A DNA stretch of 64,000 bases from Octopus sinensis. Its lineage: Eukaryota. Positions 3,887 through 36,467 of this stretch are shown here, in pieces. Each line of letters opens with the position of its first letter. The first letter of the stretch is position 1. The notes beneath the pieces are model-generated. The model saw nothing but the letters and a program-made list of their open reading frames with translations, had not been told where the DNA came from and did not search any database. Where the stretch lies: positions 37,820,001-37,884,000 of the forward strand of contig NC_043009.1 of NCBI RefSeq assembly GCF_006345805.1, written 5' to 3'. A program made the translations under genes and the position numbers.

Positions 3887-4137
3887 CTTTTACTGTTGGA
3901 TGGTAAATAAATTTGTTGTATGATTTCTGATTAAACTTCGGCTTGTTATCGTTTCTGTCTCGCACATTAACTGTCACTGCAGCTGTTGCTGTTCTTGGAG
4001 TGTAGCCAGCGTCTTCGGCTACCACAAAGAACTTATATTGGTCTTGTTTTTCTCGATCAAATGATGCAGTTGCCATAATTGTTCCCCTTGCAGGATCAAT
4101 AGTAAACTTGCCGTCCAAGTCGGATATCAGAGAATAT
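3887..4137 (-). CDS. FAT4: FAT4-like exon H (251 nt, phase 2 to 1): YSLISDLDGKFTIDP...FDREKQ...DRNDNKPKF...HPTVK(G)
   Basis: cattgcag acceptor, G|GTATTT donor; AG|A split codon with exon G. Confidence 0.94.
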
Positions 4138-4294
4138 CTGCAATGAAATAGAAGTCGTTAGTTTAATTTCAAGAGGACATTAAAACAAGAAAGAGCTATA
4201 ACGACGACGGTGGACTCGACAGATTAGGGTTCTGAAATTTCTTGCTGAACAACCTGCACAGATAATTTGGTTTTAGTGATCAAATGTTTCTACT

Positions 4295-10410: not shown

Positions 10411-10470
10411 TATTATTATTATTATTATAAAAAAAGAACAAAGACATTATGAGTAAACCTGAAAGCTCAC

Positions 10471-10651
10471 CTGATCAAGGCATTAATTCCTTCGTCTTTG
10501 TCTGAAGCTTTCACAGTCACAATAGAAGAGTTTCCATGTTGATTCTCATCAATGTAACCCACATAGTGTGGCTGCAGGAAGACAGGGGTGTTATCATTTA
10601 TATCTTGTACTTCAATGTTCACAGTACCAGTACCAGTCAATGGAGGAGACC
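10471..10651 (-). CDS. FAT4: FAT4-like exon G (181 nt, phase 1 to 2): SPPLTGTGTVNIEVQDINDNTPVF...DKDEGINALI(R)
   Basis: atcccag acceptor, AG|GTGAGC donor; GSPPLTGTG..EVQDINDN matches my recollection of Drosophila Fat. Confidence 0.94.
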
Positions 10652-11284
10652 CTGGGATAAACAAGAGATAAGCGTGATTAATTTATAACCTAACCTCTTT
10701 CATTAGCACACTCATTATTATACATTTAACATATAACTCATTAGCATGATCATACATTGTGGTCTGAGATTGACAACTACTGGTTTCCCGGTTTCTCTGG
10801 TGTATATATTTCTCCCTGGATGGGATGCTAGTCCATTACAGGATTACTTATTTTTACTAGCTGAATGGACTGGAGCAACGTAAAATGAAGTGTTTTGCTC
10901 AAGAACACAAAACATTGCTCAATCCAGAAATTGAAACCACAATCTTATGAACATGAGTCCAACACCCTAACCACTACACCATGTACAACTGGTTAACAAA
11001 TATTTGTATATTTGTTTATGTTTAACATCCACTTGTCTATACTGGCATTGGTTGGATGGGTGCTTACTTGAAGCAGTAAGCAGTATTTTTACATCTGGAT
11101 GCTCTTCCTGTCACCAACTCTTTCTTGCTTTACAAATACAAGAGTTTTTATTCTATTATTTTGAAATTATGTTATGTACACCAAAATGTAAATACAACAA
11201 CACTATTTTCTTTTTTTTCTCTTCTCTCATGTGTCATGAAATGCCAACCTTCACACACACACACACACACACAAGGTTAAAGAA

Positions 11285-11660: not shown

Positions 11661-12359
11661 GTTAATACACACCCACCCACACACATACATCAAGCTCTCA
11701 TACAGTTTCTGTCCAATCTCACTCATATGACACTGGTCAGCCCAAGGATGGAGTAAAAGATAGTGGGACTAAACCTGAGACCAATATGACACTTGAAAAA
11801 TGTATAAAAATTTGTAAACTAACAGATATTTATTTTTCCAAATTTGAAGTATATTCTTATATTGTTTTATGGGTTCCATCACTGAGCTGCGGCCATGCTG
11901 GGGTTTCACTCTTAAAGTATGTGCATACATATATATATGTGCGGTGTGTGTAATCATTGTTATGATATCTAATATTCCTTGCTAGTATGGGTCAGATGAA
12001 ACTTACTGAAATAACATTTCTATGGCTGGATGATTTTGTTGTGGGCACATGATCTTCCCACTTGTTTCCCCTAGTCCTTTAAAGCAATGAAAAGCTCAAT
12101 GGCTCTCAAATGGCTGGAGATGCTTTCACAGTAGATTATAAACAAAGACATCATCCCATAAGCACTGATATTGTTTTTACACAGCATGGAAACAACATCA
12201 AGACAATGGAAAGTCTCTCTCTCTCTTTCTCTCTTACAAACACAACAAACAAACACACACACATGCACACTATAGGAAACCCATTGCATGAGAGTAGACA
12301 TGTAGCTTCTTAATAGCAAGAAACCTTCTGGCACACAGAAACATCATTAAGGTTCTTAC

Positions 12360-12808
12360 CTGAATCGGTAGCTATAACAGTGAGTCTATAGGTAGATTGA
12401 ACTTCTCGATCAAGTTTTCGACTAGCAGTTATTTCTCCTGAGCTTGAATTAATATGAAAAATATTTCGGTCACCATCACGGAAAGCGTACGTTATCCGGC
12501 TGTACAAATGTGAATCATCATCTCTTGCTGACAATGTGGTAACGTGGACGGGCAACTTCTCCATATTCTCTTGGACATAAGCTAGAAAAGGCGAATCGAC
12601 AAACACTGGAGCATTATCGTTAATGTCAACTATGGAGATATAAACAGCTGCCGTGTCATTACGGGCTTCGACCCCATTATCTTCACATTGAATGATAATG
12701 TGGTAAGACTTCTTCCGTTCGTAATCCAATTGTTTCTGTATTCGCAACAAGCCACTGCTCTGATCGAGACTGAAATCTTGGTTATCGTCGCCTTCAATGA
12801 TAAAGTAC
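12360..12808 (-). CDS. FAT4: FAT4-like exon F (449 nt, phase 2 to 1): YFIIEGDDNQDF...LDYE...DINDNAPVFVDSPF...LDREVQSTYRLTVIATDS(G)
   Basis: tgtttag acceptor, G|GTAAGA donor; CG|G split codon with exon E. Confidence 0.95.
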
Positions 12809-14689
12809 CTAAACAAGAAGACGAGATTGAATCACGTTAATAAACAGAAGTGGGTGAATGGGTGAAGGAGTTGTTTGATCTTTTTGTTGGTAAAGATCAG
12901 GAATTATATAATTTACTGTTGCTTCATCAATCAACTACATAAGAGAAATACAATGCTGAAACATGAAAGGTGGTGGTGGTGGTGGTGTTGATGGTGGGGC
13001 TGCTAGTGATATTGGTGTAAATTTTTGTTTGTTTATTTATTCATTTATTTCTTCGATTAGCAATGCAATAATCAATACGTTTGATTCTAAATAAAACTAG
13101 AAATAGGTATTAGAAGAGATGATGATGATTTTTTAAAATTTTATTTTTATAATCTTAATAATAATAATAATAATAATAATAGTATTTTATAATTTTTTTA
13201 TAATCTTAATAATAATAATAATAATAATAATGATGATGAGAAGAAGAAGAAGAGTTAAACAACAACAGCATTATATGTCAACAAAACAATATTGAAAAGT
13301 TCCTGAATGTTGCCATTGAAACAAATTACTGAAGAATTTTTAAAAGATAATCTTACCACCCTACCCACCCCTACCACCCACACATTACCATCTGAGCTCA
13401 ATTGATTTCGTTAATATCTGTTCTGAAATGTTTGAGTTTAGTGAGTGGAAAAGCTTTATGAAATCTGTTCTACTTAATAAACTGAAGCTATAACAGCAGC
13501 AAATCGTTATCGAGGACGACTCTAAGTCAATGTGGCAGAGAGTACATAGTGGCTGCACATACAGAAGAAGGAGATTGCAGAGTATCATCATCTTCATCAC
13601 CATCGTTTCAGGCCCGTTTTCCATTTTGGTATAAGTTGGATGAGTCATTATGGTCTAAGCCGGTACTTAGGCAAAGAGTTACTATAGCCCACCTAGACAG
13701 ATTAAAGGATCAAGTGTCACTCATACTTCTTATTTCTGCTATGGCTTCTATGGACTGATGTTATTCCTAATTCTAAGAATTAACATCATCCTTCAATGTT
13801 AGTTTTCCATGATGGGTAAGGGTGATTAGGTGATGGTTTAGGGCTTAGGGGTGGGAGACCCCAGACCTTGGAAAAAAAAAAAAAAAATTTGGTCGTCTTG
13901 TTGTAGTCGAGGGCTCTTCATTGATGCCCGACACCACTGGGAGATGGCCCTCGAAGTAGCTGGAAATGGAGATCTCAAGGTCCAAATTCTTGAACGGCAG
14001 TCTTCCATGCTGGCCATGTCCATAAGGAAAGGCAAAAGAGGTCTGTGGACTATGGTGTCTTTCCTCATTCATAAAGCACTTTACAGAATGTAGAAGGTAT
14101 CGTCTACTAAGGATCTACCACTAGACAGTCGTCATGTCCTCAAGACAGGGCAACAGTGTTCTCTTAACAATACACTGTGTCTGCTTAGTCATCACCAGAA
14201 TGTACTAGGTCACTTTTATCATGGCAGTACCACTACAAAAGTTGTCTTGTCTTCAACAAAACAAAACAAAAGTGTCCTCTGGATCCTATGCTGCTCTTGC
14301 TCATTCATCGCCATCTTGAAAACCACGGTGCTACCACTAAAAAGGTTGTCTTATCTTTGACAAGATAAGATTAAAGAGTCCTCCTGGATCTACAATGTAT
14401 GTGAAAAAACTGGTACAGATGAGACGGTTTCCATAAGAACAGGTTCTGGATACTTTTTGACTGCTAATTACTCAACCAAAAAGTAACGGTTGAAAGTCGT
14501 TTCATATCAATTAGCTAAATTAGAGCAAAAATAATTACATGCTCTGCTCATTGATGCACACAACACAATGGCTATATTAATAAGAGTTGAACTGGTGACC
14601 ATGTAATCAATACTGCAGTACCTGAATCTCACCACACATAATTATAAGGTACATGTATAATGTGTGCATCTCTGTTCATAAGTTACACA

Positions 14690-14930
14690 GACAGATTTCT
14701 TCTTCTTGTGAGCCAACTGAGATATGTTTCACAATGCTGCACCTGATATCTCTGTCCCCCTTTGGCTTTGATATATCCTGAATTTCATGCATATTTCTGT
14801 CAATAATATCAATATAGTTGAAGGAGCTTTGTCCTCTGTTAGGATGTGGAAGACTCCAAAATATCACATCTCATATGGCCTGTTGGTGAACTTAATAGCA
14901 GTGGCCAGTAAGGCCCTACCCTACATTGAA
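14690..14930 (-). mobile_element. Decayed RTE LINE 3' fragment
   Basis: GHCY..VIFWSLPHPNRGQSSFNYID..DRDIRCSIV, colinear with the fragment at 2770-3005. Confidence 0.6.
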
Positions 14931-15164
14931 CAACAATGACAGATAGACAAATTATGACACTTTCTTATTCAACAAAGCTAAAATAAATGAATTATTTTAA
15001 CTTCTCATCTCCTAGCATAAAACTGTTGCCCTCTTAATTGTAACCTCATTCAGTTGAAGGGGATCTGAGTCACATGAGCAGCATGGTAACCTCACTATTG
15101 ATGGCTCCATGAAAATAAAAAAAAAAGCAACCACTATATTTTGTAAAGTGGAAAAAAGCATCCA

Positions 15165-15395
15165 TTTCTTTATTACCCACAAGGAGCTAAACATAGAGGG
15201 GACAAACAAGGACGGACAAACGGATTAAGTCGATTACATCGACCCCAGTGCGTAACTGGTACTTAATTTGTCGACCCCGAAAGGATGAAAGGCAAAGTGG
15301 ACCTGGGCGGAATTTGAACTCAGAACGTAACGGCAGACGGAATACGGCTACGCATTTCGCCCGCTGTGCTAACGATTCTGCCAGCTCGCCGCCTT
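15165..15395 (-). mobile_element. Young tRNA-headed SINE (family A; Meta/MESC-like central domain) with 16-bp TSD, inserted in an RTE-tail repeat
   Basis: TSD tggaaaaaagcatcca at 15149-15164 and 15396-15411; head ggcggcgagctggcagaatcgtt, B box gagttcaaattcc, domain gcctttcatcctttcggggtcga. Confidence 0.9.
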
Positions 15396-15619
15396 TGGAA
15401 AAAAGCATCCACTACTCTTTGGCGTTAGGAAGAGCATCCAGCTGTAGAAACCATGCCATAGCAGACACTGGAACTGGATGCAGTCATTATCCTATCAAAG
15501 CACCAAAATAATGTCAACAGGAAAGATGGACATTAAAAGAAATTGATAATGACGAAGATGATAATTTCTAACTTAAAAAAAAAAAGGTTAAGAAACAGCA
15601 AACTTTAAGCAATACTCAC

Positions 15620-16080
15620 CGGACCATACCATTGAGGCCTATGTCAAGATCTGTAGCGGTGACCCGCAATAAAATCGTACCAACAGGCTTGCTTTCACTT
15701 ATGTTCGCTTGATATTGCTTTGGGAAGAACACTGGATTGTTATCATTTTCGTCTTTTACATGGACAACAATGTCAATTGTGGACGATAACATCGGTGTCC
15801 CTCCATCTGTTGCTTTGATAGTCAAATAGTAAGTATCTCGAGACTCTCTGTCCAAAGATGACATCAATCTTAAGCTTCCGTCGTCTGGTCTAATAGAGAA
15901 TGGACCAGTAGAAGCAGTGATGGAGTATCTGATGTCTTGATTGGGCCCATCATCATCATCGTCTATTGCTTTAATGTTGTACACAATAGTATTAATTGGA
16001 GCGTTTTCTTCAACCCATATTTCAGTTGGCGACGTAAATCTTGGGGCGCAGTCATTTACATCAGATACTATAATTGTCAC
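15620..16080 (-). CDS. FAT4: FAT4-like exon E (461 nt, phase 0 to 2): VTIIVSDVNDCAPRF...DLDIGLNGMV(R)
   Basis: tttcag acceptor, CG|GTGAGT donor; open frame with LDRE and DENDN motifs. Confidence 0.95.
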
Positions 16081-16625
16081 CTGAAATAGGCAAAAAATAG
16101 AAACCAAGGGACATTATTAAGGCTCTGAAACTGAAACAATCTGGTAAAATTATTTACTTGGTCCCTAAATGTAGGTGCAGGTATGGCTGTGTGGTTAGAG
16201 AGTTTATTTCCCTACCATGTAAAGTAAAGTTACCTTCTCGAGTCATGCTGACTCATAAGGGTTGGTTTCCTGGTCTCATGGTATATATATTCCCCACCTG
16301 GATGGGACGCCAGTCCCTCACAGGATTACTCATTTTTGCCAGCTGAGTGGACTGGAGCAACGTGAAATGAAGTGTTTTGCTCAAGAACACAATGCATCAC
16401 CCGGTCCAGGAATTGAAACCACAATCTTATGATCATGAGTCCTAAATACTAAGTCATGCGCCTACCAAGTGGTTTTGCATGGCTCTTTGGGCAAGTACAT
16501 TCTACTATAATGCTGGGCCAACTGAAGTCTTGTGAGTGGATTTCATAGAAGGAAACTGAAAGAAAAATCGCGTGTATGTGCATGAGTGTGAGAGTGCATT
16601 GTGTATGTGTGTCCATTTGTTTGCA

Positions 16626-16779
16626 GGAGTGGCTGTGCGGTAAGTAGCTTGGTTACCAACCACATAGTTCCGGGTTCATTCCCACTGTGCGGCACCTTTG
16701 GCAAGTGTCTTCTACTATAGCCTCTGGCCGACCAGAGCCTTGTGAGTGGATTTGGTAGACGGAAACTGAAAGAAGCCTG

Positions 16780-16835
<56 letters not shown>

Positions 16836-17011
16836 CTATGTTTGTGCGTCTGTGTTTGTCTCTCCAACATCCCATAACTTAGCAGTTTGGCAAAAGAGAC
16901 TGATAAAATAAGTACTAGGCTTACAAAGAATAAGCCCTGGGGTCGATTTGCTTGACTAAAGGCGGTGCTTCAGCATGGCCGCAGTCAAATGACTGAAACA
17001 AGTAAAAGAGA
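16626..17011 (+). mobile_element. Full-length tRNA-headed SINE family B (internal AT/GT microsatellite)
   Basis: Head ggagtggctgtg.ggtaagtagcttg, ggcacctt.ggcaagtgtctt, tail gactgaaacaagtaaaagag. Confidence 0.9.
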
Positions 17012-17129
17012 AAAAAAAGAGAATCTATTGATGATTTACTTTACCAATGTCTTGAATAGAACCAATATTCTGTAGACTGTAGAATTTCAATACCCGTTAA
17101 AAAAAATAAGGCCAGTTTGGTAACATCAA

Positions 17130-17414
17130 ATAAGGATTAACTGATCGATTGCAATAATATAAGGATTAGGAGTATCTATTGCGGTAACAGGGATTAGTGT
17201 ATTTATTGCAGTAATAGTTAAGGAATAAGATGGATATTGGTCATGTTCTTAAGAATGGTTGATTTGTAGGAATCATCTGAGTTTGAAAAAAAATCAATCA
17301 AAAATAAGATCTTTGCTTTCCAGCTGTTGTTTTGTTTATCAATTTTATTATTGGAGAAAATATAATGGTAATCTTCATATTAATATTCTTGTAATATGGA
17401 ATGTATTGAAGTCA
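17130..17414 (-). pseudogene. Decayed duplicate (pseudo-exon) of FAT4 exon D with part of its upstream intron
   Basis: 17186-17239 aligns without gaps to 19106-19159 at 46/54 nt (QYPSYSLTITAINTLIPV versus QYPSYSLTITAMDTVFPV); weaker colinear homology to about 17352 with frameshifts; acceptor AG region deleted. Confidence 0.85.
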
Positions 17415-17641
17415 CCAGGGCAATGGTTGGGTGATAAAATACAGAATCTTAGGAATAGTCTACCATTAAATCTTATTTTCTTTTGATTTAGAAATTCCTG
17501 TGTTATTTTTCAGAAAGCATCAAGTCTGGCATGGTGAATGAAATGAAGGAAGTAAACAAGTTCCATTTTGCAGAAGATTTAAGAATTGCTATAAATTCAT
17601 ACTTTATACTTTTCTTAGATTAGATGAGAGAGAGAGAGAGA

Positions 17642-17692
<51 letters not shown>

Positions 17693-18131
17693 TTTAATTT
17701 CTAGCTTATCAATGAAAAATTTTAAATACCAAATACTTTCGTTTTTACTCAGTGTGATCAGAGTTGTAGATATGGCTGTATAGTTTGCTTCATAACCATA
17801 TGGCTTCAGGTTCAATCTCACTGCATGGTGCATGATGCTAGTAGATTCTATTTTGACCTGAGAGCAACTGCAACGACTTGTAAATGGAGTCAATAAACAA
17901 AAACCACGAAGAAGCCTGTGGCACACACACACAGATAGGTATAATATATCTAGGCAGGTACTGTTCAAGCACTCAATTATAATCAAAGTTATGGCTAACT
18001 GCATTGAGTGGTAAGGAGCACCTAGGATTATTTGAGGTAAGCAATCCCAATGGATTTCATCCAGTGGATAAATAATGGGTTTGCTTCACTGGATCATAAA
18101 AGTTGACCAAGTGTACATCCAAGGTAAAAGC

Positions 18132-18229
18132 ACAAAAGCTCGCACGATCTTGATTTTTTGTATGAATACAGACTGCGAAAGCGTGGCCCATTGATCCTTT
18201 CCGAATAGCGGCGAGCTATGCATCCGCCG

Positions 18230-18260
<31 letters not shown>

Positions 18261-18423
18261 ACTGGCTTGTGGTGGTCAAGTGTTAGCAGCGACGTCGCTT
18301 TTTGATCCTTCAATGCCGGCGCTTCCTATCATTGCGAAGCAGAATTCACAAAGCATTGGATTGTTCACCTGCTAACAGGGAACGTGAGCTGGGATTAGAC
18401 CTATTAGTTTTATCCTAACGATG
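18132..18423 (+). pseudogene. 28S rRNA fragment (3' domain V, peptidyl-transferase region), non-functional
   Basis: Universal LSU motifs gaggtgtcagaaaagttaccacagggat, gacgtcgctttttgatcc, ggattgttcacc and agggaacgtgagctggg; a 1-nt insertion (gggataaactgg) and loss of the conserved gtcgtgagacag block. Confidence 0.92.
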
Positions 18424-18789
18424 AATATGGAGATTAATATATCTGCATATTTAACTAAAATTTAAATAAAAAAATTATGCAGATGTATTCATTGTAACTA
18501 GCATATATATATATATATATATATGAAGCTGAATGACCAAAGGCACCTGTTGTAGAGAATCAAGTCTACAAAACTATCATATTTTGGGCTTTTAATACAC
18601 CATGAGCCATTGCCTAAGACCATCTTGACAGGAAGTGTGGACGGTAAAGACAGCAAAGATGTTTGTGAACTGACATCAGAGAATGGACTGGAAGCAAGAG
18701 TTTATTGTATACATGCACTACAACACACAAGGAACTTAAAAAACTTGGCAAGTTGAGCCTTGAATTCAGAGAGGGCACCTAATTGATGG

Positions 18790-18823
<34 letters not shown>

Positions 18824-19078
18824 GTGTGTGTGTGTCGGTATCTCACCACTTGACAAACAGCTTTGGTTTGTTTATGTATCCACAAAATAGCAGTTCAGCA
18901 AGAAAATTGGGGACTGATAAAATAAGAACCACAACTAAACCCCTAAAGGCAGTGTCCCAGTATAGTCAAAGTCCAATGACTAAAACATGCCAAAGAGAAT
19001 TAAAAGAATGAATCAAATATATTCATATTAGATATCACATTTCTTTTCATACAAATGAAGAATAAAAATCAAACTCAC

Positions 19079-19269
19079 CTGAGCAAGGGCAGAGTGGCGC
19101 TGCCAAACAGGAAATACTGTATCCATGGCAGTAATAGTCAAAGAATAAGATGGATATTGTTCACGGTCCAAAGTATGGTTTACCAAAATTATACCAGTCT
19201 GGGGATCAATAATAAAATGAGCATCCTGGTTCCCACCTGTGATTTTGTAGATCAATTTACTATTGATTC
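19079..19269 (-). CDS. FAT4: FAT4-like exon D (191 nt, phase 1 to 0): INSKLIYKITGGNQDAHF...LDREQYPSYSLTITAMDTVFPVWQRHSALAQ
   Basis: tttag acceptor, CAG|GTGAGT donor; G|GA split codon with exon C. Confidence 0.94.
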
Positions 19270-22200
19270 CTAAAATAGAGAAGAATAAAAGAAATGGTAA
19301 TCGTTAATTCAATTTACCGAAAACAAATAGTACATAATTTTAATTGAAGTCACATGATTCAATTAGTAAACCCCCAGAACAGACACCAACATTTTCATAA
19401 TCTATGCAATGAGAAAAATTATATTAAAACTTGTAGCATTTAAACTGGCTACATCCAGTCAAAATAGCCTACCCGTTTTATATGTTCAAACTGGCCAAAT
19501 CCAGCTGCTCACATCTTCCCTACAATGCCATTTTAAAAATAACCAATCATGCAGCTGAAATCTCAAAGCTGTATGATTAGTTCAAAACAATGTGAATAAA
19601 TAAGAATTATATTTGACAGAATGTCTAAAGGACCCAGTACTTATAATTTTTTTTTTTAAATCAGGAAAGAATGCAGTACCCACAACACTTCAGAGGGTCT
19701 CCAAGACTGACAGGAAGGAGAGAAGAAGGAAGTTAATCTCAAACTGGAAACCAGGTTTGAATGCTTGCAACAGAGTATGTGTGTGTATCGCTCTCCCTCT
19801 CTCTCTCTCTTAACCCTTTTTTTACCAACCTGGCTGAAACCGGCTCTGGCTCTGAGTACAAATGTCTTGTTTTCATGTTTTGAATTAAAATCTTCCATTA
19901 AACCTTAGTCACAATTTATGTTCCTAACACTAGCTCAATGATAACTAAGTTATTTTACTAAATTCTTTGTTATATTTAAAGTAATTGAAAGAAACACAGA
20001 TCATCTCAAAATAAATACGGTAATGAAAGAGTTAAGTAGGAATGAGCTGACTGGGTGCAGTTGTTCAGAAGCTGGCATTTTGACTGGACATTCAGCCTGT
20101 TTTGGGGACAATACTTTTTAGTACTGGAGGCAAACAAACCTATACACACACAGGCATGCACGTGCAAAAGTATGGTGGTGTGGGGGTGGAGGCAGGGGGG
20201 GGGGAGAGAAGAAGGGAGCAACATTAAAACATCAAATGTCAAATAAGTCAACATTCAATCAGTAATGCCAAAATACTCCTCTAAAATTGCTTAAACTACC
20301 TGGTGCTGGTAATGTTAAATCAGGTGACGGATGGAATAAGTCTACCAACCAAGTAGGCCACGGTGGGATTGAACCTGAAATCATGTGAATGGGAAGCAAA
20401 CTTCTTAACCACACAGCCATACCTGCACCAATGTGAAAATGGCTTGTACATACATATTTTATTAATAAGACTGAAATTTGCTTCCACATAGAAAATTCAA
20501 CATTCATATGAAAGTTAATTCTAGACAGTCTGAACAGGAAATAAGATTATAATGTTTTGTTGATTGCAGGCAGGTACAGCCAACACTCACAAGTGAATAT
20601 GACCTGGTGGCTTGCAACATGGTTATGATAATTGTTTTAGGTGCCTGTGTAGTTGCAAGAAGAAACGGATGCCAACACTGCCACTGCTGCCATCACCACC
20701 ATCACCACCACCCCCTTTATTCATGCCATCCTTGAGTAAGTGCATCAGTGCTTCATCTATGATATGGCAACTGCAAAGGGGAGATGGCTCCACCAATACT
20801 CAGCTGGTATACATACAAGAGTAGACCCCCTTCGGTCATGAACAACTATGGGATTGCACTTAGAAAGTTACCCTCCCATGTACAAGTCCGGGCAAGGTTG
20901 TTTATGGAAGGCCAGCAGTCGCCCATGCATACCAGCTTCCCCTCTCCATGCCCCTGATGTTATCCAAGGGACAGGCAAAGGCTGATACAACTCGGCACCA
21001 ATCACTTTGCAAGTCATTTCTACAGCTGAGTGAACTGGAGCAACATGAAATAAAGTGTCTTGCTCAAGAACACGAGAGCCCAGTCCAGGGACTGAACTCA
21101 TTACCTCATGAATGTTTCATCTAAGTAGACTGGAGCAACATGAACTGAAGTGTCTTGTTCAATGATACAATGCACTGCTTGGACCAAGAATGGAACCAGC
21201 AACATTATGGTCACAAACCCAACACCCTAACCACTAAGCCATTCTCTTTCACTTGCAGAATATATTTGATAATATTACTTATAATCATAACTAACGAAAA
21301 CATAAGGCCAGAAATTTGGGGAGGGGCATTAGTTAGTGAAATCACCCCTAGTACCTGTCTGGAAGTTAATTTTACAGACCCAGAAAAGAAGGAGAAGTAA
21401 CCTCAGTAGGATTTGAACTTAGAACATTAAAAAATGGGAACAAATTCAGCAATGCATCTTGTCTTAAGTCCTGACAATTGTGTCAATCTACTGCATTAAT
21501 TTCTTTAATAATGATGGCTTCTTTTAATTCAGAAATTGTTACTGCTTCAGTGAAGGTATATGGCTCAGTGGTAGAACGTCAGACCCGCAATCATGAGGTA
21601 GTGAGTTCGATTCCTGGACTGGGCTGTGTGTTGTGTTCTTGAGCAAGATACTTTATTTCATGTTGCTGTAGGAAATGAGTTGCGACATCACTGGTGCCAA
21701 GCTGTATTGGCCTAAGCCTTTCTCTTGGATAATAGTGGTGGCGTGGAGAAGGGAGTCTGCTGGTCTTCTATAAACAACCTTGCCTGCACTTGTGCCTTGG
21801 AGTGTAACCTTTTAGGTGCAATCTCAAGGTCTTTACCCTTTACTCTGCTACTGTTTCATTCTATACCAACTCTGATTGGAAAAGGATTCCAGCCTTGACC
21901 ATCACAATTGTTTTCAAGAATATTTAAGACTATTTAAGCTACCTGTTCACTGTGTTTATTATTCTAGAGTGTAATTGGAGGGAAATTTGGCTGCTATTTC
22001 TCGTATATTGAATAATTGCATAGAGGTGTTTTTATTCCCATTGTGGTATTGAACCCATGTGGTATTGAATTCAGTCCCACTGTGTGGCATCTTGAGCAAG
22101 TGTCTTCTTACTGTAGCTGGAGACTAACTCAAGGAGATGCAAAAGAATGGAAATGCAAGAATCATGAAACACATTTATCTTGAGAGAGAGAGAGAGAGAG

Positions 22201-23319
22201 AGGAGGGGAGAAAGGAGAGAGTTGGTATTTTCTTCTGACAAATTGAAATTACTCATTCTGATTGAAATTCTTAAATTTGTGACAAACAACAAAAAAAAAA
22301 AAAATAAAAAAAAAAAAATAAAGAAGAGATGAAGAAGAAGCAATATTAATATCAGATGTTGGCATACAATTGCCAGAACTCAAAACATTTGTATTGAACG
22401 AAATCATCGCGATTGTATTGAGAATGTAATATTGATCTTGCACTCGACCACATCCGCAGAAATGGTTCTACATGTTACAAAGTGACTTCCACACAATTTA
22501 ATATCATCACCAGATGCTGTGTTATCTTTGAAGCGATGTTAGTATTAAAATTTGAAGGAATTATTTCTTTGCAATGCTTTAGTGCAAAAGAAAATTAGTT
22601 TATCAGTAAATATAGAATTAGCAGTTTTTGTTATCAACGAAACTTTCCGTTTTCTTATTTGCAGTGAAAGAAGCACTGCAACTCTCTGTTAAAATTTATG
22701 AAATTTTTAATCCGGTAAATGACACGCTTTCAAATTATTACAGAATCCGAATGTCATTTTACTTTATGGGAATCTGTCAAAGTTGTTTGTATAATTTTAC
22801 GAAATAAAAACATAAGCAAACATTTAGTTGCCTTTTGTAAGTCAGCAACAGATAATTGCTCGTCATGGCCACAACAAAAGCTGTTGAAAAACACATCTGT
22901 CTTCAAATTGGTCTTATTATTGCAGATGTTATAATACCCAGTGAGGAATAATGCTAGACAGCCAGATGTTGTCTGACACAAACGCAAATAATAACAACAA
23001 TAGCGATAATAATAATAATAATCATTGTTATTTTGTTTTTGGAGAATGCTGGAAATGAATGACTATTTAATAGCTGTACAATGTCACGACAAAGAAACAC
23101 ACCCACTTACACACACACATATACAAACAAACATATGCACACACACACACACAATGGGCTTCTTTCAGTTTCTATTTAACAAATCCACTCACAAAGCTTT
23201 GGTAAACTCAGAGCTATGGCAGAAAACACTTATGAGGTGACACATAGTGGGACTGAACCCGAAATCATGTGGTTTAGAAGGATACTTGTTAACCTCACAA
23301 CCATGCCTGCATCTAAGGC

Positions 23320-23349
<30 letters not shown>

Positions 23350-23360
<11 letters not shown>

Positions 23361-24890
23361 TCTTTTCTACCAAAGGCATAAGGCCTGAATTTTGGTGGGA
23401 GGAGACTAGTCAATTATATCAACTCCAGTGTTTCACAGGTACTTAATTTATCAACCTTAAAAGGATGAAAGGCAAAGTCGACCTTGGTGGAATTTCAACT
23501 CAGAACACGAAGGCAGATGAAATACCGCAAAGCATTTCGCCTTGCATGCTAATGATTCTGCCAGCTCGCCACCTTGTATAATAATAATAATATAATAATA
23601 ATAATAATAATAATAATGATAATAATAATTCTTTCTAGTATAGGCACAAAGCCTGCAATTTTAGGGGAAGAGGTGAGTTGATTACACTGTTCCCAATGTT
23701 TAACTGATACTTATTTTATCAACCCCAAAAGGATGAAAAGCAAAGTTGACCTCAGTGGAATTTCATAAAGATGGACAAAATGGTGCTAAGCATTTTGCCT
23801 GGTGTGCTAATGATTCTGCAATGAATAATAACTTCAGATTTTGACACAGGATGAGTCGATTACACTGACCTCAGTGTTCAATTGGTACTTATTTTATCAA
23901 CCCCGAAAGAACGAAAAGCAAAGTTGACATCAGTGGCATTTGAACTCAGAATGTAAAGAACCGAAAGAAATGCCACTTAGCATGTTGTTCAGATTGACAA
24001 TGATTCTTCTAGCATGCCACCTTAATGATGATAATAATGATGATGATGATCATCATCATCATCACAATAATAATAACAATCCTTTCTACTGGAGGCACAA
24101 GGCCTCAAATTTGTGGGGAGGGGACTAGTCAATTACATTGAACCCAGTGTTTCACTGGTACTTAATTCATCAACCCCGAAAGGATGAAAGACAAAGTTGA
24201 CCTTGGCAGAATTTGAACTCAGATTAGAACAACATACCACTAAGTATTTTGTCCAGTGTGCTAACGATTCTGCCAGCTTGCGGCCTTTATAATAATAATG
24301 ATAATAATAATAATCCTTTCTACTATAGGCACAAGGCCTGAAATTTTGGGGTGGGGGCCAGTTGATTAAATCGACCTCAGTACTTAATTTATCGACCCCG
24401 AAAGGATGAAAAGCAAAGCTGATCTTGGCAGAATTTGAACTCAGAATGTAGCAATGGACAATGGACAAAATACCTATTTCTTTACTACCCATAAGGGGCT
24501 AAACACAGAGGGGACGAACAAGGACAGACAAACAGATTAAGTCGGTTATATCAACCCCAGTGCGTAACTGGTACTTATTTAATTGATCCTGAAAGGACGA
24601 AAGGCTAAGTCGACCTTGGCGGAATTTGAACTCAGAACGTAGCAGCAGACGAAATACCTATTTCTTTACTACCCACAAGGGGCTAGACACAGAGGGGACG
24701 AACAAGGACACACAAACAGATTAAGTCGATTATATTGACCCCAGTGCGTAACTGGTACTTATTTAATCGACCCTGAAAGGATGAAGGGCAAAGTCGACTT
24801 GGCGGAATTTGAACTCAGAACGTAGCGGCAGACGAAATACCGCTAAGCATTTTGGCATGCGTGCTAACGATTCTGCCAGCTTGCCACCTT
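23350..24890 (-). mobile_element. Head-to-tail array of about 8 family A / A' SINE units, mostly separated by (AAT)n
   Basis: Repeated ccccgaaaggatgaaaggcaaagt and gaatttgaactcagaa blocks, all in one orientation. Confidence 0.88.
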
Positions 24891-25565
24891 AATATTGATA
24901 ATCATACGTACAATATTTACTTTCAATATAAGAAGAAGGGTTACAAGACATAGTAATGACCTTCCAGACGTAATATACCATTAGATAATATTTGTCAAAA
25001 CTTCTTTTCAAATTATTCTTTTAGTAGAAGAAAAAAAAAAACAATAACAAAAAAATAAAAATAAAAAGAATTGATTCTCTTTTTGTATGAGCCATTAGAT
25101 TGTCTGTAAACAACATATCGTCTTGCAAAATACTGTATATCAAAATATGAATAGGCAATCGGCTAAAAACAATTTTGTTTGTTTTGTAATTATTGTTTTA
25201 TCAATGTGCATCGAGAATGAATTTTTTTTAAGGTGAAGTACATACTGAAGATGTTGGCTGATTTAAACAACAAGGTGGCTACTGACCAATGAAATAGAGA
25301 AGAGGAAGGAAGGAAGATTATTAGAAATTTTCTCAGCAATTTGCTGTTCATAATGTTTGCAATATGAAAACTATGACACATAAAAAATACTGAATCCTTA
25401 TAAGCTACTTGTGTACCAATTACAAAATATTATGTAATATAATATTGGCGTTTCCTGCTTTTGGAGGATGGTAGTTTCGGAAATATTAAGGTGGGGGCAA
25501 AGGGTGTTTTAGATGAATCTATGATCAAATTTGGTTTTTTGTTTTGCTATATTTCTCTTCAGACC

Positions 25566-26068
25566 TTTTTTTTTCCAATTCATTGTTTTATATTTCAAGA
25601 ATCAGGGGTGCAGGCATGGATGAGTGGTTAAAAAGTTCACTTGCCAATCATGTGGTTTCAGGTTCATTTCTCACTGGAGCCTTGGGAAAGTATATAGTTT
25701 CTGAAGCTCTGGGCTGACCAAAGCCTTGTGAGTGAGTTTGTTAGATGCAACCTGAAATTTGCTTGTGTGTGTAATACATACATACATATATATATATCAT
25801 CATCATCATTGGACGCTAAACGATGATGATGATGATGATATATATATATGTATGTATGTATTACACACACAAGCAAATTTCAGGTTGCATCTAACAAACT
25901 CACTCACAAGGCTTTGGTCAGCCCAGAGCTTCAGAAACTATATGCTTTCCCAAGGCTCCAGTGAGAAATGAACCTGAAACCACATGATTGGGAAATGAAC
26001 TTTTTAACCACCCATCCATGCCTGCACCCTGATTCTTGAAATATAAAACAATGAATTGGAAAAAAAAA
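25566..26068. repeat. Fold-back palindrome: arms 25566-25809 and 25823-26068, 13-nt spacer
   Basis: Arms are reverse complements with only a handful of mismatches or indels; they include SINE B, microsatellite and unique flank; the mirrored ORFs 25664-25876(-) and 25759-25971(+) confirm it. Confidence 0.97.
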
Positions 26069-26090
26069 AAAATACAATGAATTGGAAAAT

Positions 26091-26486
26091 ACAAGTAAAA
26101 TGCCCCCTGTCCAATGGACGGTGCTGAGTTGTCAAACATTAAAACCAAATTTTCTCAAAACAACTTGTCTGGCCGTCCCATAGGCCCTCTCCCCTTTGAG
26201 AAACACTGATTTAACCTAAATTTGAGACACCAGCAAAAGAAGAAATAAAGATAGACATTTTTTCTATTCCAAGAAAAACGATTTTACAAATGCATGTTCC
26301 CATGGCTTTATTGATCGCATTCTCACTTAGAATCGATTTTTGTAATATTTCCAAGACTTATACACGCCCTGATACAGTCGGTATCTACATATCAAATTTG
26401 AGCGCAATCGGGTAGAGGATGCCCGAGATCCTAGAAGACACACACACACACACACAGACAGACAGAACGGATTTTATATAATAGAT
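26091..26486 (+). mobile_element. Helitron/Helentron-like non-autonomous element (5' part also at about 7990-8205, - strand)
   Basis: Starts acaag; ends aaatttgagcgcaatcgg..(AC/ACAG)n..ttttatataatagat, an architecture typical of invertebrate Helitron-like repeats; second copy is closely similar. Confidence 0.45.
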
Positions 26487-26499
26487 ATATATACAGAGA

Positions 26500-26502
<3 letters not shown>

Positions 26503-26595
<93 letters not shown>

Positions 26596-26596
26596 T

Positions 26597-26670
<74 letters not shown>
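26503..26670. repeat. Long (AG)n polypurine tract (others at 17625-17690, 47128-47165 and 60836-60928); complex (AT)/(AC) tract at 41200-41540
   Basis: Direct reading. Confidence 0.95.
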
Positions 26671-26673
<3 letters not shown>

Positions 26674-29284
26674 AAAGACTTGAACTTGATAGTCCTTTAT
26701 TTCATCAGTTTCTGTATTTAGTAATACTGAAACTTATATAACAGGTGAAATAAAGATCTACCAAGTACAAACCCATGTTCTTTTTTTTTTCATTATTGAT
26801 GTGCTCTTTATATTATGTCATACAGCCCTCATCAGACTGCATAGAACCATGTGTAACCACACAACAGTGGAAGTTTAATGTGACAAACAATAAGAGCCAA
26901 AACTTGAAAAATTAAAATTGCTGTGTACTGAATTCATTCTTTCCTACTAGTGTGTGTGTGTGTGTGTGTGTGTGATCAGCAGAACAGCAGTAGCATCTTT
27001 TAACATTAATCTTCCCTATTGGCATGAGTTGGACAGCTCGACAGACTCTGACATATCAGAGGACTGCATCATATTCCGATGTCTGCTTTCACATTGTTTC
27101 TACAGCTGGATGCACTTCCTAAGGCCAGCCACTTTTCAGAGCGTACTGGGTGATTTTTTTTTTGTGGCACCAACATTAATGAGGTTGCCATGTGGCTTAC
27201 AAGATCACAAATCTCTTCAAATGAGTGGGACTACAGCATAGTAGTCCCACTTGTGCAATGAAAGTATGTTCATGTCTCCTAGTCTTCATATTGCATATTC
27301 ATAGTGAACAAACCTCACTGTCATACAAGTAATGTCATTTGTTTGCAATCTTCTGTGAAAACATGTCTAGCCATTGTGCTGTTTGTCTTGATGATAGGAA
27401 GAGCATCTGGCCATAGGAAAGTCTTCTTATTTTTTCACTGCCCACAAGGGGCTACACACAGAGGGGACAAACAAGGACAGACAAACGAATTAAGTCGATT
27501 ATATCGACCCCAGTGCGTAACAGGTACTTATTTATTCGACCCCGAAAGGATGAAAGGCAAAGTTGACCTCGACGTAATTTGAACTCAGAACGTAGCGGCA
27601 GACGAAATATCGCTAAGCATTTCCCCCGGCGTGCTAACATTTCTGCCAGCTCGCCGCCTTAAAATCTGCTCCAACAAATTTTGCATGACCCATGCAAGCA
27701 TGGAAAAGTGGACATTAAAACAACGAGGATGTTGATGATGAAATCAACGACATACACAGAAACTCTAGACATTTGATATTAAAATTCTAAATGATGGTTT
27801 CAAAGACAAGGATAACAAAACAAGCTAAAAAACAAACAAATGAAAAAGCCACATGATACTGCTTTTATCAACCTCAAACAACAGTTTTGTTAAACCTTAA
27901 TTCACACAAAATACTTTATGGCACCTTGTCAAAAGCTATCAAAAAACACAAAAGTAAAGGTTATTTATATTTTTCTTATGTACTTTTCAACAAACTTCTT
28001 TTGCAACAATCTAACAAAGAATATAACATCTGTTTGTTTCAATTCTACTCTGAACTAGCTTGGGGCCATGACACTCCAATTTCTCATAATTTAATCACCC
28101 AGACACTGCTGCTCTATAAGCAAAAGCAGAACCTGGAAAAGAGATTAAATGTCATAAACAGACTTAGGATATCAAGTTGCATATTGTATGCTGCCATCGT
28201 TGTCATCATCATCATCATCATCATAACCATTGTCTTCCCCATCATCATCGTTTTCATCATCATCTTCATCACTGTCATTATTGTAGTTTTTGTTGTCGTC
28301 CAATCATCATCATATTAAATATCCACTTTTCTTATCCTTGCAAGGGACAGATAGATTTTGTTGAGGCAGATTTTTTTACATTCAGGGTGTTCTTCCCGTT
28401 ACCAGCCCCCATTTATTTCCAAGCAAGGCTAATACTCCCACTTGGTCATATATGTTTTCCCAGAAGAGATTACATAAAAATGCCTGGCCATGGAGAAATA
28501 TTACCTTGCTTACAAATATCGAATTATGTTGTAAAAGCTAAATAAAAGTGTAGTTGCCCTTGTATACAAGCTTGTCCCTGGCAACCCTCTTCAGCTGAGC
28601 ATTCCTAATCTTGTGGGCTTGTAAGTGCTGGTGCCATGTAAAAAAACACCTGAGCCAGTGTTGCGTAAAAACACCCAGTACTACGCGCCTTCACTAGTCA
28701 GTTAAGGTGAGACAGTGTCATGTGACAATTTGCTGGGGCTGCCTGCTGGAGCCTATGCAGCAGGTATTTAAAGGGAAAAATTTGACAAGACAGTCAGTCA
28801 CCGGCTGACACTCACTGACGATACATCGAAGAGGCCAGAGAACAGAAGTAAGAAGACATGCACCCAACACCAGAGCTGAAGACACCTCCGAAAGGGGGGG
28901 CCCTGCCACGTCAAAACAGTAGAGGAGTAGGGGCCGAAACCGGACGTGGTTCCTCCTGATGATGTCTTGAGCTAACTGGATCCTATAAAGGAGCTGTTGT
29001 GGTAGCAGACCATGAAACACAGTTGTAATTCCTCCTGGAAAGTGGTTGGCATTAGGAAGGATAACCAGCCATAGAAACCATGCCAAAACAGGCATGGAGC
29101 TTGAACAGCGTATTTCAACAGAAATATGGTAACGAAGAGGGTTAACCTTTTTGAGACTGCCTCTGGTTCTGACACCAACTCCTTGTTTCAAAGTGATTTA
29201 AATGATTTAAATTAAAATCTTCCATCAAAAACTTCATGTTAATTTATGTTCCAAATGCTAGCTTAACAATGACAAAGATATTTT

Positions 29285-29654
29285 ACTCTTTTACTTGTTT
29301 CAGTCAGTTGACTGTGGCCATGCTGGAGCACTGCCTTTAGTCGAGCACATCGACCCCAGGACTTATTCTTTGTAAGCCTAGTACTTATTCTATCGGTCTC
29401 TTTTGCCGAACCGCTAAGTTACGGGGACGTAAACACACCGGCATCGGTTGTCATGTGATGTTGGGGGGACAAACACAGACACACATACACATATATACGA
29501 CAGGCTTCTTTCAGTTTCCGTCTGCCAAATCCAGTCACAAGGCTTTGGTCGGCCCAAGGCTATAGTAGAAGACACTTGCCCAAGGTACCGCGCAGTGGGA
29601 CTGAACCCGGAACCATGTGGTTGGTAAGCAAGCTACTTACCACACAGCCACTCC
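29285..29654 (-). mobile_element. Full-length SINE family B inserted into a TTAA MITE
   Basis: Family B motifs in reverse; MITE sequence resumes after 29654. Confidence 0.88.
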
Positions 29655-29891
29655 TAAATTCATTTAAATAAAGGCAGAGTGTTTTGACAGAAATATAACA
29701 AAAGTGTTAAAAACTGAATTGTACTTTTAAACAACATATCTGGGGTTGAAGTTCTGAAGCTTCTGAAAAATTTGATGTAACTCTAAATTGCCATTATCAT
29801 AGAGTTGCAGAATTGTAATATGGTATAATGGGTTAAAAGAAATCCAGATTTTTATGTTTGTTATTTTTCAATGAAGTGTAATGGAAACAGT

Positions 29892-30230
29892 CTGAGACCC
29901 CCTTCGGTCATGACACTGACCATGGGATTGCACCTAGGACGTTACTCTCCCAGGCACAAGTCCGGGCAAGGTTATTTATGGAAGACCAACAGTCGCCCAT
30001 GCATACCGGCCTCCCCTCTCCATGCCACCAGTGTTATCCAAGGGAAAGGCAAGGGCCGATACAGCTTGGCACCTGTGACATCGCAACTCATTTCTACAGC
30101 TGACTGAACTGGAGCAACGTGAAATAAAGTGTCTTGCTCAAGAACACAACACGCAGCCCGGTCCGGGATTCGAGCTCACAACCTCACGATCGTAAGCTCA
30201 CGCTCTAACCACTTAGCCATGCACCTTCAC
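29892..30230 (-). mobile_element. Full-length tRNA-headed CORE-type SINE (family C here) with 12-bp TSD
   Basis: TSD aatggaaacagt at 29880-29891 and 30231-30242; tRNA-like head with A/B boxes; CORE-like tgtgttcttgagcaagacacttt segment. Confidence 0.88.
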
Positions 30231-31333
30231 AATGGAAACAGTAATAATACAAAGAAAAAGTTTAAAATATTTTAAAAGAGCATCTGATGGTTTGGCAGTC
30301 TTAGAGTCAAGTAATTATGTTTTGGCAGTTTAACCTTTTTGACGCCAATTTGCCTGAGACCAGCCCCTAGCTCTATGATAAAACTTCCTGTTTTAAAGTG
30401 GTCTAAATTAATATCGTCCATCAGAATTTCGTGTTAATTTATACCTCACATTACCAGCTTGGTAAGGACAAAGTTATTTTATGGAATTTATCAATACTTT
30501 CAAAAATTATTGAAACAAAGGCAATATTTCTCAACAGAAAGATGGTAACAAAGGGTTAGGTAGCACAAGTGATTAGAACTATTGGAACCCTTGTAAAAGA
30601 CGGAAGCTACCAATTTTTTTTTTTTTACTGCATTCCTGGAGGCTATGTATTTAACAGCTATATCCAGTGCCATGTTGCAGGAAGACAAAAATTAAAAAAA
30701 AACTAAAAACAAAAATATTTCCATTTAAAAAATATTCATAGCTACTTAGTACGTTTGAGAAAAATCAATAAACTTTTTACATTAGAACTGTTTTTAAAAG
30801 ACATTTCTAAATAACTATTTAGCAAACTGGTTTTATATTCTAAATGAAGACACAGATAATGTTTTGGTTTTGCAAATTAAGATATTTTTGAAAAGTACAA
30901 CTTAAAGAAGCATTTCAAACTGTAAAGAGATATTAGTTGAGAATAGAGTAAACATACATCAAACATATTGTATAATCAAAAAAAAAAAAAAATAAATAAT
31001 AATAATAATAATAATAAGAGTATAAGTACAGGCATAACTGTGTAGGTAAAAGAGTGCATTGAGATGTTAGCTGAGTGACTGGATTCAAAATGATAGGAAA
31101 GTGGTATGCTGGCAGAATCGTTAGCACGCCGGGCGAAATGCTTAGCGGTATTTCGTCTGCCGTTATGTTCTGAGTTCAAATTCTGCCGAGGTCGACTTTG
31201 CCTTTCATCCTTTCAGGGTCAATAAATTAAGTACCAGTTACGCACTGGGGTTGATGTAATCGACTTAATCCGTGTGTCTGTCCTTGTTTGTCCCCTCTGT
31301 GTTTAGCCCCTTGTGGGTAGTAAAGAAATAGGT

Positions 31334-36132: not shown

Positions 36133-36213
36133 TCTAAAAATACAAAAACAGAACTATAGCAACGCCACAGCCTTGGCCTGGAACACATAAAAGAATAAAG
36201 GAACTACACTTAC

Positions 36214-36415: not shown

Positions 36416-36467
36416 CTGAAAGAAATAAAATATAATTCAGAGTAAGAATTTTAGCATTGCTTATCTT

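What the first reader, a model, noticed from the sequence alone, without database searches (positions are those of the whole stretch)
17130..17414. Fossil duplicate of a FAT4 exon inside the following intron, with internal triplication
Seen: 17186-17239 matches exon D 19106-19159 at 46/54 nt in the same orientation, 1920 nt away. Decayed homology covers the rest of the exon's 5' part (NNKLINKTTAGKQ..ID..QT.MI versus NSKLIYKITGGNQ..IDPQTGII) and upstream intron landmarks (aatggtaatc, ttgaagtcac), so this was a DNA-level duplication rather than a retrocopy. The acceptor AG is deleted, indels break the frame, and the TITAMDTVFP segment became three units of about 27-29 nt (ITAINTLIP / VTAIDTPNP / IIAIDQLIL). 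The best-preserved part is QYPSYSLTITA. Inference: a failed mutually exclusive exon duplication, i.e. the route to Dscam-like isoform diversity caught as a relic in a Fat cadherin.
Basis: partly seen in the sequence, partly recalled or inferred. Interest (0 to 1): 0.72.

Follow-up and report, generated by a model that had tools for sequence, protein, structure and literature searches.

The report
Decayed exon copy inside cadherin intron
A roughly 290-base stretch inside an intron of a Fat4-like cadherin gene is a real but dead and decaying DNA copy of part of the exon just upstream; such relics are common in animal genes, and nothing here shows it ever worked as an alternative exon.

Summary
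On the minus strand, 17186-17353 aligns with exon D (19079-19269) at 71% over 169 columns. The 54-nt core is 46/54 identical, offset 1920 nt. The local alignment score is 23 SD above dinucleotide shuffles, and nhmmer gives E 1.7e-9. No other exon in the window matches the copy, and there is no third copy.

Weak colinear homology runs about 60-80 nt into the upstream intron. It includes an exact 11-mer found only twice in 64 kb. The flanks do not match the neighbouring exons. This was therefore a local DNA duplication, not a retrocopy.

The acceptor AG lies in a 12-nt deletion, all three frames carry stops, and the exon's last 27 nt and donor have no counterpart. A 27-30 nt unit is tandemly triplicated (17130-17215).

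The substitution pattern (flat codon-position profile; core pN/pS 0.34, P 0.18) fits neutral decay. The "best-preserved core" is only marginally non-random (P about 0.04-0.07).

Most of the 1.9 kb spacing is later insertion: a SINE split by a 28S rRNA fragment.

The "failed mutually exclusive exon" reading is untested, and the missing 3' end weakens it. Intronic exon-duplicate relics are already catalogued by the thousand. This is an ordinary new member of a known kind.

The parts
19079..19269 (-). Exon D, the parent. It is 191 nt, starts in phase 1 and ends in phase 0, and encodes (G)INSKLIYKITGGNQDAHFIIDPQTGIILVNHTLDREQYPSYSLTITAMDTVFPVWQRHSALAQ, the middle of one cadherin repeat. Acceptor AG at 19271-19270, donor GT at 19078-19077.
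   Evidence: Pfam Cadherin E 2.6e-87 on the joined exons. The peptide joins cleanly to the neighbouring exons (..ASDADTG|INSK.. and ..SALAQ|VTIIVSDVNDCAPRF).
19270..19353 (-). Intron sequence just upstream (gene sense) of exon D that still shows colinear similarity to the copy's upstream flank. The shared landmarks are GATTACCA and GTGACTTCAAT.
   Evidence: Alignment. Score z = 2.9 on its own. Exact 11-mer found only at the two colinear sites.
17186..17353 (-). Fossil copy, the part homologous to exon D. It corresponds to exon positions about 12-164 of 191. It is 71% identical with about 5 indels and has stops in all three frames. The 54-nt core 17186-17239 is 46/54 identical.
17354..17415 (-). 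Fossil copy, the part homologous to the intron upstream of exon D. The 12 nt holding the acceptor AG and the first exon bases are missing here.
17130..17215 (-). Tandem triplication at the 3' end of the copy. U1 (17189-17215) is the homologue of exon ATTACTGCCATGGATACAGTATTTCCT. U2 (17159-17188) and U3 (17130-17158) are extra units. The units are 27, 30 and 29 nt long and about 77-80% identical pairwise.
   Evidence: 0 of 300 shuffles reach the tandem score. Not reported by TRF.
16616..17028 (+). Young copy of an abundant tRNA-derived SINE of about 400 nt with an internal microsatellite, 89% identical to the window consensus. It lies antisense to the gene, about 100 nt beyond the 3' end of the fossil. 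It is an independent later insertion, not part of the duplication.
17771..19014 (+). Older, diverged copy of the same SINE superfamily (72% to consensus). It is split into 17771-17933 and 18789-19014 by an insert of about 855 nt that contains a 28S rRNA fragment (18033-18417). This block fills 1244 nt of the 1664 nt between exon D's donor and the fossil.
15619..16080 (-). Next coding exon downstream (VTIIVSDVNDCAPRF...GLNGMVR). The acceptor was read at 16081-16082. The 3' boundary is approximate. It bounds the intron that holds the fossil.

Best explanation
An old, local DNA duplication copied a segment of at least 230-290 nt a short way downstream into the next intron, in the same orientation. 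The segment held about 60-80 nt of intron plus at least the first 164 nt of the 191-nt cadherin-repeat exon D.

The copy is not a usable exon. Its acceptor AG is gone, and no homologue of the exon's last 27 nt or of its donor site is detectable. Indels and stops break every frame. It has been drifting neutrally while the parent exon stayed under purifying selection, which is why only the exon-derived part is still clearly recognisable.

Replication slippage then triplicated a 27-30 nt unit at the copy's 3' end. Later insertions pushed parent and copy to 1.9 kb apart and flanked the copy: an old SINE, a 28S rRNA fragment inside that SINE, a (GA)n tract and a young SINE.

Shown: the homology and its significance, its extent, the disabling lesions, the triplication and the inserted elements.
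Inferred: the order of events, neutrality, slippage as the mechanism, and whether the copy was truncated at birth or later.
For: - Alignment significance.
- Only exon D, out of nine cadherin exons in the window, hits the copy. It does so at 61.5% amino-acid identity, against 29-42% to the paralogous repeats.
- Intron homology and the unique colinear 11-mer.
- The flanks do not match the neighbouring exons: score 14 and 16 versus 30 for the own intron.
- Stops in all frames and the 12-nt deletion over the AG.
- Codon-position mismatches are 12/53, 9/54 and 18/53 over the homologous part (18/60, 10/62 and 22/61 over the whole exon). Core Sd = 4, Nd = 4, pN/pS 0.34, P = 0.18. About 0.5 is expected if one lineage is constrained and the other is free.
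- Triplication.
- The SINEs next to parent and copy belong to different subfamilies and differ in age, 72% versus 89% identity to consensus.
- 28S fragment at 209.8 bits, E 4e-54.
- With the old SINE and its insert removed, the copy would start about 420 nt after exon D's donor.
Against: - No homology is detectable between the sequences downstream of the parent and of the copy. The original unit, and whether the event was strictly tandem, therefore cannot be shown.
- The old SINE between the copies looks more diverged (28% from consensus) than the estimated neutral decay of the copy (about 16-18% per lineage). If that ordering is real, the SINE was already there, and the event was either a larger tandem unit or a short-range dispersed insertion.
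- The core is somewhat better preserved than the rest: 8/54 versus about 30/106 mismatches, with 0/18 versus 9/36 second-position changes (P = 0.02 uncorrected).
- No expression data and no second species were available.
Confidence: 0.8

Rival explanations
1. The duplication first produced a complete second exon D that was used for a time, as a mutually exclusive or alternative exon. It later lost its splice sites and decayed.
For: - Same orientation, adjacent intron, and intron flank copied along with the exon.
- At 191 nt the exon is not a multiple of 3, so including both copies would shift the frame. That is the classic setting in which exclusivity is enforced.
- In the 33 nt encoding QYPSYSLTITA all three differences are synonymous.
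Against: - The copy has no counterpart of the exon's last 27 nt or of its donor.
- pN/pS and the codon-position profile are what pure neutral decay of the copy predicts. Three synonymous changes out of three has P of about 0.08 under that model, by my own estimate.
- There is no complementary docking or selector sequence.
- A gastropod Fat4-like locus has a single equivalent exon. This is weak evidence because the species is far too distant.
Confidence: 0.1
2. The copy, or its 54-nt core, still has a function or is kept similar to the exon. It could be a cryptic or poison exon, an intronic splicing-regulatory decoy, or a patch refreshed by gene conversion from exon D.
For: - The core is 85% identical against about 64-72% for the rest, and no second-codon-position change falls in the core.
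- A pyrimidine-rich ...CCATTCTTAAG| acceptor-like site lies just upstream of the core, in the same phase as exon D. A 40-codon open stretch follows it (read by eye).
Against: - The scan-corrected heterogeneity is only P = 0.04-0.07 once the non-homologous 3' end is excluded.
- Indels in the rest inflate its mismatch count.
- No plausible donor lies before the stop codon.
- There are no expression or conservation data.
Confidence: 0.06
3. The segment did not come from exon D. It came from another cadherin gene or repeat, by insertion of paralogous DNA or a retrocopy, or it is a chance match in AT-rich sequence.
For: - Cadherin repeats resemble one another, and the genome outside this window could not be searched.
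Against: - z = 23 against shuffles, and a maximum of 54 versus 142 against real window segments.
- No other exon in the window hits the copy.
- Colinear intron landmarks.
- The flanks do not continue into the neighbouring exons.
Confidence: 0.03

Closest known systems
Unannotated intronic homologues of neighbouring exons (tandem exon duplication relics). Sources: Letunic, Copley & Bork 2002, as cited in PMC9013439; Ivanov & Pervouchine 2022, PMC9013439.
   Same: - Nucleotide homology between an exon and a segment of the adjacent intron, in the same orientation, arising by DNA-level duplication.
- PMC9013439 reports 4,027 such intronic targets in human genes. It cites more than 2,000 candidates from the 2002 survey.
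   Different: - This one is clearly dead: no AG, no donor, broken frames.
- It is partial at the 3' end.
- It carries a secondary 3x tandem repeat.
- It sits in a Fat4-like cadherin of a non-model animal.
Mutually exclusive exon pairs in cadherin-superfamily and Ig-superfamily genes (arthropod N-Cadherin, three ME pairs, PMC2655722; Dscam1 clusters, as described in PMC9013439).
   Same: - They start from the same mutational event, tandem duplication of an internal exon that encodes part of an extracellular repeat.
   Different: - Those exons are intact, have the same length and phase, are spliced and conserved, and are often governed by competing RNA structures.
- None of these features is met here.
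Processed (retro) pseudogene fragments
   Same: - A non-functional copy of coding sequence.
   Different: - The copy keeps intron sequence upstream and does not run into the neighbouring exons.
- It lies in cis, 1.9 kb from its source.

Membership tests
Intronic relic of a local exon duplication (pseudo-exon) | Statistically significant nucleotide homology to a neighbouring exon of the same gene | tested here: met
   z = 23 against shuffles, blastn E about 1e-19, nhmmer E 1.7e-9.
Intronic relic of a local exon duplication (pseudo-exon) | Same orientation and location in an adjacent intron | tested here: met
   Both lie on the minus strand. The copy sits between exon D (19079-19269) and the next exon (starting at 16080).
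Intronic relic of a local exon duplication (pseudo-exon) | Homology extends into flanking intron (DNA-level event) | tested here: met
   Met on the upstream side only, and weakly: z = 2.9, plus a unique colinear 11-mer. The downstream side shows none.
Intronic relic of a local exon duplication (pseudo-exon) | Loss of coding and splicing competence | tested here: met
   AG inside a 12-nt deletion, stops in all frames, no donor homologue. Splice-site strength was not scored with a model.
Intronic relic of a local exon duplication (pseudo-exon) | Not included in mature mRNA | not testable with these tools
   No transcript data are available.
Mutually exclusive exon pair | Two intact exons of equal or similar length and the same phase, with functional splice sites | tested here: not met
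   The copy lacks the acceptor, the donor and the last 27 nt, and its frame is broken.
Mutually exclusive exon pair | Mechanism that enforces exclusivity (competing RNA structures or a docking site) | tested here: not met
   No complement of the shared intron landmark in the window, and only microsatellite inverted repeats. Frame-shift/NMD exclusivity would apply in principle because the exon is 191 nt.
Mutually exclusive exon pair | Signature of purifying selection on both copies | tested here: not met
   Core pN/pS 0.34, P = 0.18. The codon-position profile in the rest is flat at 9/35, 9/36 and 13/35.
Processed pseudogene / retrocopy | Exon-exon continuity without intron sequence | tested here: not met
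   The copy's flanks score 14 and 16 against the neighbouring exons, versus 30 against the own intron.
Fat4 / Fat (ft)-type giant cadherin (host gene) | Tandem cadherin repeats, with closest named relatives being Fat4/ft | tested here: met
   Pfam Cadherin in 4 stretches, E 2.6e-87. The top named hits are Protocadherin Fat 4 (Gekko, Lytechinus) and cadherin-related tumor suppressor-like (Diaphorina), at 36-45% identity; unnamed hits reach 54%.
Fat4 / Fat (ft)-type giant cadherin (host gene) | Full architecture (about 34 cadherin repeats, EGF and laminin-G domains, transmembrane segment, cytoplasmic tail) and reciprocal-best orthology | not testable with these tools
   The window holds only part of the gene. 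All listed hits in the protein database were shorter than about 650 aa, and none was a close (cephalopod-level) relative.

The most novel reading that the evidence does not exclude
The copy is the remnant of a second exon D that was once spliced, or it is still used as a cryptic or poison exon. In that case its 54-nt core is kept similar to the parent by selection or gene conversion. A Fat-type cadherin in this lineage would then have experimented with alternative cadherin-repeat modules, as arthropod N-Cadherin does.
Probability: 0.07. Interest if true: 0.5.

Novelty: new member of a known kind. Interest (0 to 1): 0.2.

Why it matters
This is a clean, well-delimited example of the raw material from which alternative exons arise, and of its usual fate, which is to die. 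It also shows how SINE and rRNA-fragment insertions inflate introns afterwards.

It does not reveal a new mechanism. Intronic exon-duplicate relics are already catalogued in the thousands, and mutually exclusive exons in cadherins are already known.

It would gain interest only if related species carry an intact or spliced second copy.

Tried and rejected
1. Larger duplication that includes the SINE. Both parent and copy are followed by a SINE in the same orientation. The two SINEs belong to different subfamilies and differ in age, 72% versus 89% identity to consensus, and the family has at least 13 copies in the window. These are independent insertions.
2. Downstream intron homology after the SINE and its insert were removed by script: score 25 versus 28.3 +/- 3.7, so none. 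A self-comparison of 13-24 kb shows no other diagonal at this offset.
3. Gene conversion or selection on the core. The heterogeneity falls to P = 0.04-0.07 once the non-homologous end is dropped, so it is not claimed.
4. Retrocopy: rejected.
5. Third copy or array: none found by blastn, tblastn or nhmmer.
6. Docking or selector RNA structure: none.
7. Cross-species test:
   - The exon D peptide found nothing in the protein database.
   - The 370-aa query found only relatives at 54% identity or less, with no close orthologue.
   - The metagenome scan found nothing.
   - One gastropod Fat4-like locus (L001) has a single exon-D equivalent with a conserved boundary, but it is far too distant to bear on this event.
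   - P0019 was not on record.
8. tRNA scan of the region: no hits.

Full report
**Setting.** The window carries part of a large cadherin gene on the minus strand. Open stretches with cadherin motifs lie at about 60115-60402, 43949-44539, 36137-36436, 19031-19303, 15619-16113, 12313-12831, 10470-10682, 3855-4157 and 1302-1574.

The joined peptide of four neighbouring exons gives four Pfam Cadherin stretches (E 2.6e-87). Its best named relatives are Protocadherin Fat 4 (Gekko, Lytechinus) and the insect ft orthologue, at 36-45% identity; unnamed hits reach 54%. No close orthologue exists in the databases on hand, and every listed hit is shorter than about 650 aa. The Fat4-like label is therefore supported, but orthology and the source organism are not established.

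Exon D spans 19079-19269 and is 191 nt long. Its acceptor AG is at 19271-19270 and its donor GT at 19078-19077. It starts in phase 1 and ends in phase 0. It encodes the middle of one cadherin repeat and joins cleanly to its neighbours..ASDADTG|INSK.. upstream and ..SALAQ|VTIIVSDVNDCAPRF downstream, where the next exon starts at 16080.

**The observation.** The claimed match is real.
- 17186-17239 versus 19106-19159 is 46/54 identical, offset 1920 nt.
- The match extends to 17186-17353 versus 19106-19265 at 71% over 169 columns. This is the only strong hit of the segment anywhere in the window.
- Against 500 dinucleotide-preserving shuffles the local alignment scores 142 versus 31.2 +/- 4.8 (z = 23). 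Against random real segments of the same AT-rich window the maximum was 54.
- The core alone gives z = 17.9. The 5' exon part without the core gives z = 9.6.
- nhmmer with the exon as query gives E 1.7e-9 for exon positions 12-164.
- At protein level, exon D alone among the nine exon peptides tested hits the copy. It does so at 61.5% identity, against 29-42% for the paralogous repeats.

**DNA-level origin.** The alignment continues upstream (gene sense) into intron, through GATTACCA and GTGACTTCAAT.
- On its own this part is weak: z = 2.9, with the highest shuffle score equalling the observed score.
- However, the exact 11-mer occurs only twice in 64 kb on either strand, and both occurrences are at the colinear positions 17405-17415 and 19343-19353.
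- The copy's flanks do not resemble the end of the preceding exon (score 14) or the start of the next exon (score 16). The own intron scores 30. A retrocopy is therefore rejected.

**State of the copy.**
- A 12-nt gap removes the acceptor AG and the first exon bases.
- About five indels break the frame, and all three frames carry stops.
- The exon's last 27 nt and its donor have no detectable counterpart (3' part z = -1.0).
- In their place the copy carries a tandem triplication of the segment homologous to ATTACTGCCATGGATACAGTATTTCCT. The units are U1 17189-17215, U2 17159-17188 and U3 17130-17158. They are 27, 30 and 29 nt long and about 77-80% identical pairwise.
- The tandem self-score is 31 versus 14.9 +/- 2.5, and none of 300 shuffles reaches it. 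TRF did not report it.
- U2 and U3 keep a G that U1 has lost (the GAT of the exon). The units are about as diverged from each other as U1 is from the exon, so the triplication is old.

**Was it ever under selection?**
- Over the whole exon alignment, mismatches by the exon's codon position are 18/60, 10/62 and 22/61.
- Over the homologous part alone, the core gives 3/18, 0/18 and 5/18. The rest gives a flat 9/35, 9/36 and 13/35.
- In the core, Nei-Gojobori counts are Sd = 4 and Nd = 4, giving pN/pS 0.34 with P = 0.18.
- If the exon lineage accepts mostly synonymous changes and the copy drifts freely, a ratio near 0.5 and a modest third-position excess are expected (my inference). The data fit that and do not call for a functional phase of the copy.
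- The better preservation of the core looked significant (P = 0.008) when the non-homologous 3' end was included. It drops to P = 0.04-0.07 when only homologous columns are used. Indel-induced misalignment in the rest would inflate the contrast further. I do not claim gene conversion or constraint, and keep it as a low-probability rival.

**Surroundings and spacing.** An abundant tRNA-derived SINE of about 400 nt with an internal microsatellite has at least 13 copies in the window.
- A young copy, 89% identical to the window consensus, lies at 16616-17028. That is about 100 nt beyond the fossil's 3' end.
- An older copy, 72% identical, lies between parent and fossil. It is split into 17771-17933 and 18789-19014.
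- The insert of about 855 nt that splits it contains a 28S rRNA fragment at 18033-18417 (LSU_rRNA_eukarya, 209.8 bits, E 4e-54, model positions 2398-2996).
- The two SINEs carry different subfamily signatures and differ in age. They are independent insertions, not evidence of a larger duplicated unit.
- With the old SINE and its insert removed, the fossil would start about 420 nt after exon D's donor, and that figure includes a 65-nt (GA)n tract. The original event was therefore short-range.
- Whether it was strictly tandem cannot be shown. With the insertions removed, the sequences downstream of parent and copy share nothing detectable. No other diagonal appears in a 13-24 kb self-comparison.
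- Second-position mismatches suggest about 16-18% neutral change on the copy's lineage. That places the duplication before the young SINE (11% from consensus). Its order relative to the old SINE is uncertain.

**Mutually exclusive exon hypothesis.** In its favour:
- The orientation and position are right.
- The upstream intron flank was copied along with the exon.
- A 191-nt exon would shift the frame if both copies were included.

Against it:
- The donor and the last 27 nt are missing.
- There is no selection signal.
- There is no complementary docking sequence, and only microsatellite inverted repeats are present.
- There is no third copy.

A gastropod Fat4-like locus (L001) has one exon-D equivalent with the same boundaries and no second copy in its 670-nt intron. 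That lineage is far too distant to inform on an event young enough to keep intron similarity.

**Comparison with what is known.** Searching introns for homology to neighbouring exons is an established approach.
- PMC9013439 cites a 2002 survey that reported tandemly duplicated exons in about 10% of animal genes, plus more than 2,000 unannotated candidates.
- PMC9013439 itself lists 4,027 intronic targets in human genes.
- Mutually exclusive exon pairs are known in a cadherin, arthropod N-Cadherin (PMC2655722).
- A full-text search found no paper linking Fat4 with mutually exclusive exons beyond incidental mentions.

This case is a new member of a known kind.

**Verdict.** The "fossil DNA-level duplicate with triplication" reading is supported. 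The "failed mutually exclusive exon" reading is unproven, and the missing 3' end makes it rather unlikely. Interest is low.

Noticed in passing
window 18033-18417 (+), inside 17934-18788: A decayed fragment of eukaryotic 28S (LSU) rRNA sits in an intron of the cadherin gene, inside the microsatellite region of an old SINE. Rfam RF02543 gives 209.8 bits, E 4e-54, model positions 2398-2996 with internal deletions. How it got there was not examined (rRNA retro-fragment, template switching).
   Followed up: partly
window 16616-17028, 17771-17933 + 18789-19014, 29281-29655, 35741-36136, 47464-47862, 48263-48691, 52439-52877, 59232-59619 and others: A very abundant SINE of about 400 nt has at least 13 copies in 64 kb, on both strands. 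It has a tRNA-like head (box-B-like GGTTCAGTCCC), an internal AT/GT microsatellite and a conserved 3' part (...GGTGCTCCAGCATGGCCACAGTCAAATGACTGAAACAAGTAAAAGAG). Identity to the window consensus ranges from 72% to 96%, suggesting several subfamilies or bursts. ARAGORN calls no tRNA in the part of the window it scanned, 16000-20000.
   Followed up: partly
window 16263-16472: A second interspersed repeat family of about 150-190 nt has at least 13 related copies in the window, for example 10781-10970 at 84% and a tandem pair at 21014-21230. It was not classified.
   Followed up: no
window 23324-23990 and 15215-15395: Tandem array with a period of about 268 nt at 23324-23990 (76-86% between units). 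A related single piece lies at 15215-15395, in the intron after the next exon.
   Followed up: no
window 14015-14390: Diverged tandem repeat with a period of about 118 nt, 63% identity over 278 nt.
   Followed up: no
window 19270-36211: The intron upstream of exon D appears to be about 17 kb long. The preceding coding exon ends near 36212, and ..ASDADTG joins directly to INSKLIYKI. The intron holding the fossil is 3 kb. The boundaries of the 36-kb exon were not verified base by base.
   Followed up: partly
L001 15920-16108 and 16779-17717 (Batillaria attramentaria contig JACVVK020000171.1): In a gastropod Fat4-like gene the equivalent of exon D is a separate exon of nearly the same extent, 189 nt. 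The two following exons of the window are fused there into one, so the intron at 12832-15618 of the window has no counterpart.
   Followed up: partly
window 16775-16849: Sub-threshold Rfam hits fall on the SINE's internal AT/GT microsatellite: mir-1277 at 36 bits (cut-off 81) and SCARNA7 at 25 bits (cut-off 65). They are almost certainly low-complexity artefacts.
   Followed up: no
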